A stretch of 62,862 nt of DNA, counting the filler, from Klebsormidium nitens (Eukaryota > Plantae > Klebsormidiophyceae): assembly GCA_000708835.1 (NCBI GenBank). It is 7 parts of 7 records of this genome, joined end to end, with 100 filler letters (N's around TTAATTAATTAA, not from the genome) between each part and the next. Parts side by side here need not be neighbours in the genome. Positions count along the whole stretch, not along the records: positions 60,307 to 62,862 come from DF238727.1; 6 more parts are not named here. One strand, given 5' to 3'. The position numbers and the translations under genes were made by a program. A model generated the notes under the pieces. That model did no database searches, was not told where the DNA came from, and saw only the letters and a program-made list of their open reading frames with translations. Numbering within the stretch: the stretch's first letter is position 1; every line of letters begins with the position of its first letter. Positions 11,429 to 62,862 of this stretch are shown one piece after another.

Positions 11429-14400
11429 ATGGCTCCGTTTTTGGAGGAGTCGCAGGCAGGATCGGCCCTGCGGTTCAAGGTTTCATACCGGGGAAAGCTG
11501 CAAGAGCTACACAGAGAACCTTCCGAGATGCTGGCTGGACTAGCCCACCACTTAGGCGAGGTTACTGGTGCCAATCCAGATACAATCAAGCTGATTCTAC
11601 CAAGGAGCAGGAGAGGGGTTCCTGGAAAACCTGCACCCCCTGCCCTGCAACCCTTGAGTGATGAGTGGAGGGGCTTGACACTGGCGGAGGCTGGCATTAC
11701 TCAGGTTAGCATCTGAAATTGATAACTCCGTAAAGTTGCAGCTGGAGAATCTAGGAGAAGTATTGCAGGTCTTCTTTGGCGTGCTCTCGATAGACGGCTT
11801 GTGACACGGCGCTTGAATCCTTGGTGTTATGCACAACATTTTGCAATCTTCAGAACAATGGTGAAGGCCATGTGAGAAATTCTGCAAAAAGCAAGGAGCC
11901 TGTCATCAGCAGAAGTCTGGTTTTTAAACCGTTTGGCACCGGATCAGAAGTTTCACAGCGTTGCCCTGAGGTGTCACTTCTCTGCCTGTGACCATATTGA
12001 CGCTCTGCCTCTTGAAACATACAAGATCCTTGTTAAACCCCTATATTCGTCGTGTTGCCACCATGACAAGTTTCTACTGCCCCCATTCCTTTTAGTAGCT
12101 CGTCTAGCCCAGAACAAAGAGTGGAGAAGGCTGCATTGAAGAACTCTCACTTCATGGAGCCCCATGCTGAGCAATTGAACTTCTGTATCACAGGACATGA
12201 CCATCCTCATGTCTGGAGCTTCCACCACCGAAGTGGCGGCTGTGAGCAAGACCTCTGCGGCGGGCATCGCTGACTTTGAGTATGAGGAGAAAAGGGCACG
12301 CATGCGCGCGCGCAGGAAACGCGCTCCCCTGGCCCTGCCCACTGGGCCGTATGTGTTTGCGGATTTCAGGACCCTGCAATTGCCTGGCATCTTGGTAAGG
12401 AACCAAGCCCCATGTCTCTGCTGGTGCATGTGCTTGCAACGTGGCACAACCTTGTGTGAGGGTATGTGAGTTTCCATCAAAGTTCTGAGGAGGCTCTTGC
12501 CAAGCAAATCCTGTATGCTCTTTGCCCTTAGCCAATCCTTCCGTTCACCTTTCTGTCGCCTCCCGCGCCCTTGCATATGGTTTGCAGCAGACTTGAGGGT
12601 TGCTAACAATTGCTGTGGTTTTGCAGCTGCATCCGCCAGAGACCAAGGCACTGAAGCTCATGCACAAGCTGGCCAGCGATCCCGGTGTCGTTGCCATAAT
12701 GAACAAGGTGAGCCTACGATCTTGCTAAGAGCCTCAACGACTTGCAATTAACCTATAGTTTCGTCCCTACTTATGCTTGTGACAAGTCTTAGAGAACGCA
12801 GGGTGTTGACCAATATCTCTCTTTGGCTTTGACTTGATAACCGCTTGTTCTGCAGAGACTCAAACGTTCATGGGTGATCTAGAGTCAGCCCTTGAGTTGG
12901 CCGTGCCGATGTGAGTTGTGGATACCAGAACGTTTCGGTTCCATGTTCCTTTCTGATGCCGAGTTCCGCAGCTCGAGAAATTGGTTCGTCCGTTCTGACA
13001 ACCGGTTCTTTGTGGTCCGCAGTACAAGTGGCGCGTGGGCATTATGACCGAGCTGGCCCCCGAGGGCTACGTCGGGGTGAGCCCCGTGTGCCTCCTGGGC
13101 TTCAACCGTAACCGCGGCGCCGAGATCTCGCTCCGCCTGCGCACCGACGACCTCGCCGGGTTCCGCAAGTATGACAGCATCCGGAAGACGCTGCTCCACG
13201 AGCTGACGCACATGGTGCATGATGACCACGACGAGCACTTCAAGGCGCTGAACAGTCTGCTCAACAAGCAAGCAGAGGAACTAGATTGGACGCGGAAGCG
13301 GGCGCACACCCTGGGGGGCAAGGCGGCTACTGAGAGCGATGAGGACGAGTCGGAGAGCAGTGACGAGGAAGTGGGGCGGGTTCTCGGAGGGGGGGGGCAG
13401 AATACACTGGTGATGGACCCCCGGGCAGCAGCAGCTGCTGCAGCGATGAGGCGGGATGCTGAGAAGAGGAGGCGGGAGGCGGAAGGGCAGCCGACTGCTG
13501 ACGTGGCGGATGATGTCATTATGGACGATCCAAGCGTGGGGAGAAGCGGGCTGCCAAGTTCTCCGCTAGTAGGGGGAGTCTCAGGAACGATTGTGGATGT
13601 CGGCAGGGAGAGCTCGTCGGAGGTGGAAATAACTGAAGGAACGACGGGGACAGGCGCGTCACGGGGGGCGCAGGAGAAAGGCCACATCGACGAAAAGGAT
13701 GTGAAAGAAGGGCAGCAGAATGATGATAGCGCTCGGGAAGGTGCAGCGAGGGGGTGCCGACAGTCGAGCGGATGCAAGAGGAGCCGAGCACTGGAGGCGG
13801 GGAGCAGACAAGTGAAACGGGAATCACGGAAGGTGCCTCCATCGGGGCTGCGGGCTCAGTTTCTGAAAGCGGGGATATTCAGCTGCAGAAAGGGGATGAG
13901 GTCACGCCTTCGAGAAGAGAACCCGACCCAGACGATCCTGACGATACCCTTCTGGAACTCAGGCACGATCAGGACGTAGCAAAGAAGCAAGCCGAATTAA
14001 CGTCTCAGCTGAATCGAATGGAAGAAGAGGAAACGGACGGGAGCGAACCGATGACTGTGGACGCACCACTTGCGGCGCCGGCGCCGGGGCCCAGTGAGCA
14101 GGTGCCACGTGGCAGCGACGACGCGGCAGCTGGCGGTTTGGAATGGCAGCGGGCTCAGGAAGCTGCGGCGGAGGCGAGCGGGCGGGTGCAGAAAGCGGTG
14201 GCGGATTTGAGGCAACAGGCCGGACCGGGGGAGGTTACGCTAACCCTGAAAACGCTGGCAACGATTCTTCGCAATGTGATGGAGCACCCGGCCGAGGCGA
14301 AGTACCGGCGGGTGCGCAAGACGAATGCGGCGTTCTTCGAGAGGGTCGGCAGGTTCCAAGGTGAGCTCGGAGGGGCGTACTGTGGTAGGGTTTTCGGATT

Positions 14401-60306: not shown

Positions 60307-60927
60307 CCATCGTGACGCGATTGTCATTCGCACCTGCACTGGAGCTCTGACTGAGAAACTCGACCAGACCAAAGAGCCAGTCAACTTCGTGCTAAACCCA
60401 GGGACCGCCGATGAACTTACCGTCAGAGCGCACGTGGTGATTGTCAACCAAAACGTGCCTGACACTTTGATTGGCATGAGTGTCATGGGACCAGCTGAGC
60501 TCACGCCTGACATGCGCAAGAAACGCGTCAAATACTACGTCGAGGATGACCAGATTACGCGCAAGTCCTTCTTGCCGTGCAAGTTTCCCATCGACTACGC
60601 CAGGTCGCCACTGCAGGCGTACCAGGCGCTTAACGCTTACACGGGATTCATCGTTCCCGTTGTAAAGAGCCCGCGCAATGCGGAGGATGTCGCAGTGACG
60701 CGCGCGCGCCTTGCTGACCATCAGACGAAGCTGCTCCCTGAGATGACTGAAATCTTCGATCGCAGCATTCGGGCCCTGGCTACACCAGAACGAAAGCCGC
60801 CTGTGATTAGCGACCCAGCTTACCGGCACTTGAAGCCGTTAAACACGTCGTTCGTCGACAAGAAAGACGTGCTGGCCACACCTGGCCCAGGCATGGTGGT
60901 CAGCCAAGAGGTTGCCCACTTCGTGCA
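60307..60927 (+). mobile_element. Retroelement polyprotein fragment (aspartic-protease-like region), DNMT-less copy
   Basis: Open frame containing VIVNQNVPDTLIG, which resembles the C-terminal DxLIG part of retropepsins. It is paralogous to 61250-61683 with mostly synonymous differences, then jumps to VSQEVAHFV, matching 62724 onward. Confidence 0.6.
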
Positions 60928-61249
60928 NNNNNNNNNNNNNNNNNNNNNNNNNNNNNNNNNNNNNNNNNNNNNNNNNNNNNNNNNNNNNNNNNNNNNNNNN
61001 NNNNNNNNNNNNNNNNNNNNNNNNNNNNNNNNNNNNNNNNNNNNNNNNNNNNNNNNNNNNNNNNNNNNNNNNNNNNNNNNNNNNNNNNNNNNNNNNNNNN
61101 NNNNNNNNNNNNNNNNNNNNNNNNNNNNNNNNNNNNNNNNNNNNNNNNNNNNNNNNNNNNNNNNNNNNNNNNNNNNNNNNNNNNNNNNNNNNNNNNNNNN
61201 NNNNNNNNNNNNNNNNNNNNNNNNNNNNNNNNNNNNNNNNNNNNNNNNN

Positions 61250-62675
61250 CACTCTGATCGGTATGAGTGTCATAGGACCGGCCGAGCTCACTCCCGATAT
61301 GCGCAAGAAACGCGTCAAATACTACATCGAGGAGGACCAGACGGTGCGCAAGTGCTTCTTGCCGTGCCAGTTTCCCATCGACTATGCCAGGTCGCCGCTG
61401 CAGGCATACCAGGCACTTAACGCTTACACGGGATTCATCGTACCCGTTGTAAAGAGCCCGCGCAATGCGGAGGACGTCGCAGTGGCGCTTGCGCGCCTTG
61501 CTGACCATCAGACAAAGCTGCTAACTGAGATTACTGAGATCTTTGACCGCAGCATTCGGGCACTGGCTATTCCAGAACGAAAGCCGCCCGTGATCAGCAA
61601 CCCAGCTTACCGGCACTTGAAGCCGTTGAACACGTCATTCGTTGACAAGAAGGACGTGCTGGCCACACCTGGCCCAGGCATCGTAGTCGTTGAGTTGTTT
61701 TCTGGCCTCATGGCCACTACCGAGGCGTTGCTTCGGCAGGGAGTTACCGTCAGAAAGGTGTATGCCTGCGAGATTGACGCCAAGACCCGCAAAATCGCTG
61801 CTAAGCGTCTGGCCGTCTTGCACACCTTATTCCCACAGCTCCTGAGCGCAGACGCTATTAGAGACTGTCATGACCACTTGGGAGACGACGTCAGCAAAAT
61901 CAACAGAGGCCACATGGCCCAGCTGGAACGTCCTGACCTTGTGGTGGCCGGATTCCCGTGTCAGGGATTCTCACGAGCCGCAGAGTACGCCCTAGGCTTG
62001 CGCGATTCGCGAACCAGGCTCTTCGACGATGCCATCCGAATCGTGCACCTCATCAACAACATTTGGGGCGGCTCTGTGGGCTACCTGTTTGAAAACGTTG
62101 ACGCCAGCGATCACCCGCAGGCAGACGTACGGGCAGAGTTTAACACCGTGGTGAAGGGAGTGCTCGGACACGGCTTCGCATTTGATGCCGTGGCCGTTGG
62201 CTCTTACGCGCATCGCCAGCGCCATTGGTGGACCAACCTGGCCCCAAGCGCCCTCATGTGCGAAATGGTTGAGAAGAAGTTCAAGCACCGCAAGCCGGAT
62301 CAGATTGTCCAGAACATTCTGCAACACGGCCACCGGGCTCAGAACGCTCAGCACGCCCGCGCACCTGGAAAGGTCTCGGTCAACGTGCGCGGCCAGCCGC
62401 TTCGCGCTCTGTCCACGTTTGTCACGGTGCGCGGCTCTCACGCCTATCACCCTGGACAGCAGAGCATGATCCAGCAAGCCAACGGATTCTGGGATGAGCC
62501 TACGGCTCTGGAGCGCGAGCGCGCTCTGGGATTCATGGACGATACCACAAAGGTTTGCCCCTCTATTTCAGAGGCTGACCGCAGAAGAATCCTGGGAAGC
62601 ACCATGGACATGCACGCCCTGCAGTTCATCATTGGCAGCATCCAGTGCTTCCAGTTCGCCTTTTTCACCGATTGA
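61250..62675 (+). CDS. Retrotransposon-encoded DNMT3-like C5 cytosine methyltransferase fused behind a protease-like region
   Basis: Motif I VELFSG, II ACEID, IV VAGFPCQ, VI LFENV, VIII RQRHWWTN and C-terminal ERERALGF...LG.TM. Intronless, with the 5' end in a gap. The frame stays open after the single TGA to the window end. Confidence 0.88.
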
Positions 62676-62681
62676 CAATTA
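62673..62681 (+). promoter_or_regulatory. Stop-codon readthrough signal TGA-CAA-TTA
   Basis: The stop is followed exactly by CAR-YYA (CAA TTA), and the same frame continues for ~62 codons (QLARRNAP...PGMVTSQEVAQFVQ...) to the window end. Confidence 0.7.
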
Positions 62682-62862
62682 GCCCGGCGCAACGCTCCAG
62701 TCCAGGAGAGTTGTGACCGGATACCTGGCATGGTGACCAGCCAAGAGGTTGCCCAGTTCGTGCAGAGCGGACTTCTGCGCTGCCGCACCCTTCGCTCCCA
62801 GCCACAGGACCCCAGCACCGTGTTGGGACAGCCACCTGAGCTGGGGGGGGGGGGAAGTCAGG

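What the first reader, a model, noticed from the sequence alone, without database searches (positions are those of the whole stretch)
62660..62862. Programmed stop-codon readthrough (UGA-CAA-UUA) right after the retroelement DNMT domain
Seen: the protease-DNMT ORF ends TTC ACC GAT TGA CAA TTA GCC and the same frame stays open to the window end. Known: stop-CAR-YYA is the TMV-type leaky-stop context, also reported for SIRE-type plant retroelements. Inference: the element makes abundant Gag/PR-DNMT and a minor readthrough product into downstream pol, so the methyltransferase sits in the high-abundance product. I am not aware of this having been noted for DNMT-bearing retrotransposons.
Basis: partly seen in the sequence, partly recalled or inferred. 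Interest (0 to 1): 0.85.

Follow-up and report, generated by a model that had tools for sequence, protein, structure and literature searches.

The report
Leaky stop after retrotransposon DNA methyltransferase
In a family of algal (Klebsormidium-type) Gypsy retrotransposons that carry their own DNA methyltransferase, a conserved leaky-looking TGA stop and an RNA hairpin sit right after the methyltransferase, so reverse transcriptase and integrase are probably made only when ribosomes read through the stop: a familiar viral trick in a new place.

Summary
TGA at 62673-62675 ends the protease-tail/DNMT reading frame, is followed by CAA TTA GCC, and the frame stays open for 62 codons to the piece's end. 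That alone is weak (P about 0.2 by composition). The comparative evidence is strong.

The element belongs to the KnitGypsy-Dnmt3 family (Klebsormidium; de Mendoza 2018).
- Of 18 distinct related loci, down to about 45% protein identity, 15 have TGA at exactly this codon. The other three have TGG (two) or CGA (one), each a single-base change, and they are nested within stop-bearing clades.
- Every TGA is followed by C, and the next codon is only CAA (then TTA or CTA) or CGG. These are the two classical readthrough contexts.
- A hairpin starts 7-11 nt after the stop in the different clades, with different sequences. It is absent in the two TGG copies.
- In the better-preserved copies the same frame runs on without another stop into reverse transcriptase, RNase H and integrase.

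Readthrough itself is inferred, not measured. Stop-codon readthrough in retroelements is well known, so this is a new member of a known kind. It was apparently not described for these elements.

A neighbouring copy in the piece has lost DNMT, stop and hairpin together as one exact 1050-nt in-frame unit.

The parts
60307..60927 (+). Copy A: C-terminal half of the retropepsin plus linker, joined directly in frame to the post-stop spacer (…ATPGPGMVVSQEVAHFV). It has no DNMT, no stop and no hairpin. It ends at the N gap.
   Evidence: About 90% nt identity to copy B upstream. The junction equals the left 15-nt repeat followed by the right flank.
60928..61249 (.). Run of N (scaffold gap) between the two copies
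61251..61685 (+). Copy B: protease tail (LIGMSV motif at 61254-61271) and the linker leading into the DNMT
   Evidence: By homology to L019, where Pfam gag-asp_proteas ends at this motif.
61686..62672 (+). Dnmt3-type C5 cytosine methyltransferase domain (329 codons). Motifs: I ELFSG 61692-61706, IV GFPCQG 61950-61967, VI FENV 62088-62099, IX 62514-62534, X-like 62592-62609.
   Evidence: Pfam PF00145, E 6e-9. Best PDB hits are DNMT3A/3C. 99% identical to P0001 and 84% to K. nitens KFL_017580010.
61677..62726 (+). The 1050-nt in-frame cassette (DNMT + TGA + context + hairpin) that is absent from copy A. It is flanked by imperfect 15-nt direct repeats at 61674-61688 and 62724-62738.
62673..62675 (+). 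In-frame TGA stop at the native C-terminus of the DNMT
   Evidence: Conserved in 15 of 18 distinct loci. Ancestral on the tree.
62676..62681 (+). CAA TTA hexanucleotide (CAR-YYA, type I readthrough context). C at +4 is invariant after every TGA in the family.
   Evidence: literature
62684..62720 (+). Predicted RNA hairpin: 10-bp outer stem with one bulge, and a 4-bp inner stem. It starts 8 nt after the stop.
   Evidence: z -3.06 for the first 66 nt; positional minimum across loci
62676..62861 (+). Same-frame open continuation (62 codons) = N-terminal part of the spacer that leads into RT in relatives. It is cut off by the end of the piece.
   Evidence: dN/dS 0.26-0.81 in this frame.
62843..62854 (+). 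G12 homopolymer encoding the conserved Gly-Gly-Gly motif of the spacer. The piece ends just after it.

Best explanation
The piece is part of a KnitGypsy-Dnmt3-type Ty3/gypsy LTR retrotransposon of a Klebsormidium-like alga. Its genomic RNA encodes Gag (zinc knuckle), protease and DNMT in one frame, then a UGA, then in the same frame a spacer of about 100-130 residues followed by RT, RNase H and integrase (with a PHD finger in some copies). Most ribosomes stop at the UGA and make Gag-PR-DNMT. A minority decode the UGA with a near-cognate tRNA, helped by the C at +4, by the CAA-UUA (or in most relatives CGG) codon context, and by a hairpin about 8 nt downstream. Those ribosomes make the full Gag-PR-DNMT-Pol fusion. 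The methyltransferase is therefore produced in the same amount as Gag, and Pol in a much smaller amount. Shown here: conservation of the stop, its context, the position of the hairpin, and the in-frame pol downstream. Inferred: that readthrough actually occurs, its efficiency, and which amino acid is inserted.
For: Stop conservation: TGA at the homologous codon in 15 of 18 distinct loci. 24 of 29 predicted proteins end exactly 6 residues after the conserved FQ motif, and the 5 that read on have W (4) or R (1) there, each one base from TGA. On the DNMT tree the sense variants arise 3 times, nested inside stop-bearing clades.
Context: all 16 TGA loci have C at +4. The next codon is CGG in 11 and CAA in 5; CAA is followed by TTA or CTA. 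These are the type II and type I motifs of Beier and Grimm as summarised by Firth 2011.
Hairpin: it starts at +10 to +14 in all clades, with unrelated sequences. Sliding 48-nt folding over -360..+180 has its deepest minimum at windows starting +0..+12 (mean z -1.77). With dinucleotide-shuffle control the minimum is again at +6 (mean z -2.17; clade-averaged -1.57 against background -0.24 +/- 0.47). The two TGG copies lack it (z +0.85 and +1.1).
Downstream coding: frame 0 leads into RVT_1, RNase H and integrase. Spacer lengths differ only by multiples of 3. dN/dS in the first 60 codons after the stop is below 1. There is no conserved downstream AUG.
TGA is not a general sense codon: L019 has a single TGA in 1902 in-frame codons.
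Against: There is no expression, Ribo-seq or proteomic evidence. None of the retrieved copies is fully intact: there are frameshifts in L005, L011 and L012, and a TAA nonsense mutation in L019. So activity of any single copy is unproven. Within the window's own clade the hairpin has only one compensatory change among 4 sequences, which is not significant. Its arms also encode conserved residues (ARRN, CDRI), so RNA and protein constraint cannot be separated there. Hairpin z-scores are weak in some loci (L013, L019, L021, L022). Precedent for caution: in Tca2 a gag UGA plus a predicted pseudoknot did not drive readthrough in a yeast reporter (PMC2194720). One sub-lineage apparently spread after TGA became TGG, so the stop is not indispensable.
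Confidence: 0.78

Rival explanations
1. The TGA is a true terminator and pol is expressed by another route. Candidates are a spliced RNA that removes the stop, an internal promoter or initiation site in the junction (as found for the Tca2 junction in yeast), or supply of pol in trans from other elements.
For: The K. nitens gene model P0012 bridges the stop with a predicted intron (…HALTFL joined to TQPPG…). The Tca2 junction contains a cryptic promoter and does not direct readthrough in yeast. Copy A shows that an element without the stop region exists.
Against: The predicted intron is an ab initio model with no RNA evidence here. The DNMT tail up to the stop is under strong purifying selection (dN/dS 0.04-0.34). 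The sequence right after the stop keeps frame 0 with only 3n indels and dN/dS below 1, which is not expected of an intron. There is no conserved in-frame AUG after the stop. The invariant C at +4, the CAA/CGG restriction and the positioned hairpin have no role in these alternatives.
Confidence: 0.14
2. The stop is a shared defect of dead copies: a nonsense mutation in a master copy, inherited passively, with no function.
For: All retrieved copies carry at least one other lesion. De Mendoza 2018 reports that copies are methylated and silent.
Against: The stop is present in every major clade of a family whose members have diverged to about 45% protein identity, while DNMT and pol stayed under purifying selection. 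The other lesions are at different, copy-specific places, whereas this codon is shared. Its context is restricted to two readthrough motifs.
Confidence: 0.04
3. UGA is decoded as an amino acid here by reassignment or as selenocysteine.
For: Sense variants at this codon are W and R, the usual near-cognate readings of UGA.
Against: Only one in-frame TGA occurs in 1902 codons of L019 and in 832 codons of L005, so TGA is not a general sense codon. No SECIS search was done. Streptophyte nuclear genes use the standard code (general knowledge).
Confidence: 0.02

Closest known systems
KnitGypsy-Dnmt3 (Klebsormidium nitens Gypsy retrotransposons carrying a Dnmt3-type DNMT; de Mendoza et al. 2018, PMC5890265)
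   Same: A Dnmt3-type DNMT with the catalytic motifs, placed between protease and RT of a Ty3/gypsy element. 83-84% protein identity to K. nitens gene products. One K. nitens genomic copy (L012, DF237340.1) has the same TGA at the same codon.
   Different: The paper describes the DNMT as part of the Pol polyprotein ORF and does not mention a stop or readthrough. Here the DNMT is seen to end the upstream ORF. The window is not identical to the NIES-2285 assembly; its closest match (99%) is an ENA metagenome contig.
Type II readthrough signals of alphaviruses, tobraviruses, furoviruses and coltiviruses: UGA-CGG or UGA-CUA plus a 3' stem-loop (Firth et al. 2011, PMC3159437)
   Same: UGA, C at +4 and CGG as the next codon in 11 of 16 relatives. 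A stem begins 7-11 nt after the stop, the same spacer range (7-12 nt) as reported for these viruses.
   Different: The hairpins here are compact (about 35-50 nt) rather than long-range stems enclosing 100-150 nt loops. The window's own copy has CAA UUA rather than CGG. Function is untested.
Type I (TMV-type) readthrough: UAG-CAR-YYA. SIRE1 is a retroelement that uses stop-codon suppression.
   Same: The hexanucleotide CAA TTA (window, L011, L001) or CAA CTA (L016) fits CAR-YYA. SIRE1 is a plant LTR retroelement reported to use stop suppression (Havecker and Voytas 2003, as cited in PMC2194720 and PMC2829016).
   Different: The stop is UGA, not UAG. A hairpin accompanies it, whereas tobamovirus-type sites generally show no extended structure. 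SIRE1's stop separates pol from an env-like ORF in a Ty1/copia element. The SIRE1 paper itself could not be read, so its context motif was not checked.
Gag/Pol in-frame stops of retroviruses and Ty3/gypsy elements (MuLV UAG + pseudoknot; fission-yeast Tj1, Tosmo1-3 and Tcry1 with conserved GAA-TGA-CT)
   Same: An in-frame stop sets the ratio of structural to enzymatic products. In the yeast elements it is also TGA followed by C. In MuLV the 3' structure has an 8-nt spacer.
   Different: There the stop follows Gag and precedes PR. Here PR and a captured host-type enzyme lie upstream of the stop, so both belong to the abundant product.

Membership tests
KnitGypsy-Dnmt3 retrotransposons | Dnmt3-type C5-DNMT with conserved catalytic motifs (I, IV PCQ, VI ENV, IX) | tested here: met
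   Pfam PF00145. Motifs located. Best solved-structure hits are DNMT3A/3C.
KnitGypsy-Dnmt3 retrotransposons | DNMT embedded in a Ty3/gypsy coding region between protease and RT-RNaseH-integrase | tested here: met
   Upstream protease tail in the window. PR-DNMT | RVT_1 | RNaseH-rve-PHD in L019, RVT_1-RNaseH-integrase in L005, and gag zinc knuckle upstream in L011 and L012. The window itself ends before RT.
KnitGypsy-Dnmt3 retrotransposons | Close sequence relationship to the K. nitens copies | tested here: met
   83-84% identity to KFL_017580010 and KFL_003910030 products
KnitGypsy-Dnmt3 retrotransposons | Terminal repeat arrangement (described as DIRS-like repeats in the 2018 paper) | not tested
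   The piece holds no element ends. The loci were not examined for LTRs.
Programmed stop-codon readthrough, type I (stop-CAR-YYA) | In-frame stop followed by CAR-YYA | tested here: met
   TGA CAA TTA at 62673-62681. The same in L011 and L001; CAA CTA in L016. The stop is UGA rather than the typical UAG.
Programmed stop-codon readthrough, type II (UGA-CGG/CUA + 3' stem-loop) | UGA followed by CGG or CUA | tested here: not met
   The window has CAA. 11 of the 16 TGA-bearing loci (window included) have CGG.
Programmed stop-codon readthrough, type II (UGA-CGG/CUA + 3' stem-loop) | Stable RNA stem starting about 7-12 nt 3' of the stop, conserved in position | tested here: met
   Window hairpin 62684-62720, z -3.06. 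Positional minimum across loci. Covariation within the window's clade is not significant.
Programmed stop-codon readthrough (any type) | Stop and downstream frame conserved, with an essential domain encoded downstream in frame | tested here: met
Programmed stop-codon readthrough (any type) | Measured readthrough product or efficiency above background | not testable with these tools
   Needs a reporter assay, Ribo-seq or proteomics
Selenocysteine recoding | SECIS element and Sec at the UGA | not tested
   Considered unlikely. Sense variants are W or R, not C. No SECIS scan was done.

The most novel reading that the evidence does not exclude
The TGA is the captured host Dnmt3 gene's own terminator. 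It would have entered the element together with the DNMT and a short 3' segment that forms the hairpin, making one module. That module was then kept as the switch that sets the Gag-PR-DNMT to Pol ratio, so a gene capture would have created a recoding site. Three observations fit. The stop lies within about 3 residues of where DNMT3A/3C end. Stop, context and hairpin all lie inside the 1050-nt cassette that copy A lacks as an exact in-frame unit. Where the stop was lost (TGG copies) the context and hairpin are gone too.
Probability: 0.35. Interest if true: 0.6.

Novelty: new member of a known kind. Interest (0 to 1): 0.45.

Why it matters
It changes how DNMT-carrying retrotransposons are read. 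The methyltransferase is not just one more domain of a low-abundance Pol polyprotein. It is the C-terminal end of the abundant Gag-PR product, made in structural-protein amounts. That bears on what the enzyme is for, for example self-methylation, host manipulation, or packaging into particles. It also explains why genome annotations of Klebsormidium split or 'splice' these genes. It provides a compact, naturally varied readthrough cassette: UGA-CGG or UGA-CAA-UUA plus a hairpin, with natural TGG and CGA controls, from a streptophyte alga that could be tested directly. The mechanism itself is textbook for retroviruses and plant viruses, so the advance is incremental.

Tried and rejected
- Pfam on the 62 residues after the stop and on copy A gave nothing. 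Their identity comes only from relatives.
All 12 exact-protein look-ups were then spent to reach 19 loci.
- No complete census of K. nitens copies was possible, because genome contigs holds only prokaryotes.
- A search with copy A for other DNMT-less copies found none. Copy A is best read as a one-off deletion between the 15-nt repeats rather than an ancestral empty site. Its flanks are only about 10% diverged from copy B, whereas DNMT-bearing clades are far older.
- Within-clade covariation of the hairpin (4 sequences) was not significant. Whole 128-nt fold z-scores were mixed. The case for structure rests on the positional scan across clades.
- I considered a programmed frameshift at the G-run because L012 changes frame there. 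I rejected it because L011 and all better copies stay in frame 0 through the homologous Gly-Gly-Gly motif.
- The second in-frame stop of L019 is a TAA replacing a conserved Tyr, an ordinary nonsense mutation.
- The SIRE1 primary paper is not held.
- No structure prediction was run; it would not bear on the question.

Full report
**What is in the piece.**
The usable stretch is 60307-62862. It holds two partial copies of the same element, separated by 322 N.
- Copy A (60307-60927) encodes the C-terminal half of a retropepsin and a linker, ending …ATPGPGMVVSQEVAHFV.
- Copy B (61250-62862) starts at the last protease motif (LIGMSV). It runs through the same linker into a 329-codon C5 cytosine methyltransferase (Pfam PF00145; motifs I, IV PCQ, VI ENV and IX located).
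- Copy B then ends at TGA 62673-62675. The next codons are CAA TTA GCC, and the frame stays open for 62 codons to the end of the piece.
- By composition that open stretch has P about 0.2, so it is not informative alone.

The sequence after the stop (from …IPGMVTSQEVAQFV) is the same sequence that follows the linker directly, and in frame, in copy A. The DNMT, the TGA and the following 17 codons therefore form an exact 1050-nt in-frame cassette (61677-62726). Copy B has it and copy A lacks it.

**Identity.**
The ORF finds 76 relatives.
- The best is 99% identical (an ENA metagenome contig, L011).
- Klebsormidium nitens proteins follow at 83-84%.
- Many metagenome proteins, chiefly from JGI samples including soil, go down to about 40-45%.
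- This is the KnitGypsy-Dnmt3 family of de Mendoza et al. 2018 (PMC5890265). [quoted passage not shown] They do not mention a stop or readthrough in the text or in the held supplement. No other paper in the library uses the family name.
- It is an algal retrotransposon. It is not human and not a virus of animals or crops.

**Is the stop conserved?**
Among 29 predicted proteins that cover the DNMT C-terminus, 24 end exactly six residues after a conserved FQ motif. Five read on: four with W and one with R at that position, both one base away from TGA.

I fetched DNA for 19 loci, 18 of them distinct. I projected the codon that follows the last DNMT residue.
- It is TGA in 16 loci (15 distinct), TGG in 2 and CGA in 1.
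- Every TGA is followed by C.
- The next codon is CGG in 11 loci and CAA in 5.
- CAA is followed by TTA (window, L011, L001) or CTA (L016/L017), which fits CAR-YYA.
- CGG is followed by TTT, TTA, CTA, GGC or CGC.

On a maximum-likelihood tree of the DNMT domain, the stop is present in all major clades. The sense variants arise three times, nested within stop-bearing clades. TGA is not a general sense codon: L019 has one TGA in 1902 in-frame codons.

**Does the frame lead into pol?**
- In L005 the frame after TGA CGG stays open for 831 codons to the contig end. It contains RVT_1, RNase H and the integrase zinc domain.
- In L019 one frame holds PR-DNMT, then TGA, then 428 codons with RVT_1, then a TAA, then RNaseH-integrase-PHD. 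The TAA replaces a conserved Tyr, so it is an ordinary nonsense mutation.
- The RT start is in frame 0 with no other stop in L003, L004, L005, L015, L016/17 and L019. It is in frame 0 with one extra stop in L018. It is frame-shifted only in visibly decayed copies (L012, L013, L020, L021).
- Spacer lengths differ among clades only by multiples of three.
- dN/dS in the first 60 codons after the stop is 0.26-0.81, against 0.04-0.34 in the last 100 DNMT codons. This is a weakly constrained but coding linker.
- There is no conserved in-frame AUG after the stop.
- Upstream, gag (zinc knuckle), PR and most of the DNMT lie in one 995-codon ORF in the K. nitens copy L012.

**RNA structure.**
Folding the first 66 nt from the stop gives a hairpin whose 5' arm starts at +10 to +14 in essentially every TGA copy. 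The sequences differ between clades:
- an outer stem CCGGCGCAAC/GUUGUGACCGG in the window clade;
- GGGACCG/CGGUCCC in the L003 clade;
- a C-rich/G-rich stem in L005/L022;
- others in L004, L016, L019 and L021.

A sliding 48-nt scan from -360 to +180 in 17 loci has its deepest minimum at windows starting +0 to +12 (mean z -1.77). With dinucleotide-shuffle z-scores the minimum is again at +6 (-2.17). Averaged per clade it is -1.57, against a background of -0.24 +/- 0.47. The two TGG copies have no such hairpin, and one has also lost about 8 codons there. The CGA copy, a recent change, still has it.

Within the window's clade, 91% of cells pair and both outer-stem substitutions keep pairing. With four sequences the covariation is not significant.

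The arrangement (UGA, C at +4, CGG or CAA-UYA, and a stem after a 7-11 nt spacer) matches the readthrough signals reviewed by Firth et al. 2011.

**Mechanism proposed.**
Termination at UGA yields abundant Gag-PR-DNMT. Occasional near-cognate decoding yields Gag-PR-DNMT-RT-RH-IN. This is inference from sequence. A caution is Tca2, where a gag UGA with a predicted pseudoknot did not drive readthrough in a yeast reporter.

**Rivals.**
- Splicing over the stop is suggested only by an ab initio K. nitens gene model that jumps the stop. It fits poorly with coding constraint on both sides of the stop.
- A passive inherited defect fits poorly with conservation across the whole family while other lesions are copy-specific.
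- Reassignment of UGA or selenocysteine is unlikely.

**Origin of the stop (speculative).**
The DNMT tail aligns to DNMT3A/3C catalytic-domain chains, with 12 residues left in the element and 9-10 in the chains. The TGA therefore sits at the natural Dnmt3 C-terminus and may be the captured gene's own terminator.

Stop, context and hairpin all lie inside the cassette missing from copy A. Copy A's junction equals the left 15-nt repeat (as in L011, CCAGGCATGGTGGTC) followed by the right flank. The right repeat is CCTGGCATGGTGACC. Copy A's flanks are only about 10% diverged from copy B, so copy A is most simply a secondary deletion by recombination or template switching between these repeats.

**Comparison and novelty.**
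In-frame stops that set the Gag to Pol ratio are known in several retroelements:
- MuLV;
- Ty3/gypsy elements of fission yeasts, with a conserved TGA-C;
- Tca2;
- SIRE1, where the stop separates pol from an env-like ORF.

The DNMT-bearing family is also known. What appears new is that in this family the recoding site lies after PR and the captured DNMT, so the methyltransferase belongs to the abundant product. It is also new that the family alternates between the two classical contexts while keeping a positioned hairpin. I rate it a new member of a known kind, of moderate interest.

**Limits.**
- Only 19 loci were sampled, many from two JGI samples.
- No fully intact copy was seen.
- No expression data were available.
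- The piece ends 187 nt after the stop.

Noticed in passing
window 60307-60927 versus 61250-62862; repeats at 61674-61688 and 62724-62738: The copy before the N gap lacks the DNMT, the TGA and the hairpin as one exact 1050-nt in-frame unit. Its junction looks like a deletion between two imperfect 15-nt direct repeats (12 of 15 identical, 9-nt exact core GGCATGGTG). No other DNMT-less copy was found in the protein database search.
   Followed up: partly
window 62843-62854; L012 about 13840-13850: A G12 homopolymer encodes a Gly-Gly-Gly motif that is conserved in the spacer of all clades. The piece ends right after it. The K. nitens genome copy L012 (G7) changes frame exactly there, either a real indel or a homopolymer assembly error.
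   Followed up: partly
window 60928-61249: A 322-N scaffold gap joins two partial copies whose order (junction of one, then protease tail of the next) cannot be a normal tandem of full elements. A scaffolding artefact among repeats is likely.
   Followed up: no
P0012 (KFL_000540020) and P0041 (KFL_003910030); L012 10001-13671: K. nitens gene models step over the in-frame stop and over frameshifts with predicted introns (for example …HALTFL joined to TQPPG…). Public annotations therefore hide the stop.
   Followed up: partly
L011 4742-5332; L014 8330-9290: In two copies the spacer after the stop is joined almost directly to the LRAFLGTAGYYRRY motif at the RT/RNase H boundary. The RT core is missing, which may indicate RT-deleted non-autonomous derivatives that keep DNMT.
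   Followed up: no
L019 5860-6010; L018 10991-12016; L021 10819-11649: The integrase of these elements ends in a PHD finger rather than the chromodomain usual for chromoviruses. A neighbouring unrelated element in L014 has SH3_Tf2-1 plus Chromo.
   Followed up: no
about 48-66 nt upstream of the stop in the 13 TGA loci (window about 62607-62672): The shuffle-controlled folding scan shows a second, weaker dip (mean z -1.5 at offset -48) inside the DNMT tail coding region.
   Followed up: no
L013 2483-6460: The long JGI contigs that carry many diverged family members also carry a TIR/TPR NLR-like gene. This is consistent with a eukaryotic (algal) genome inside a 'metagenome' sample (3300060284/85).
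   Followed up: no
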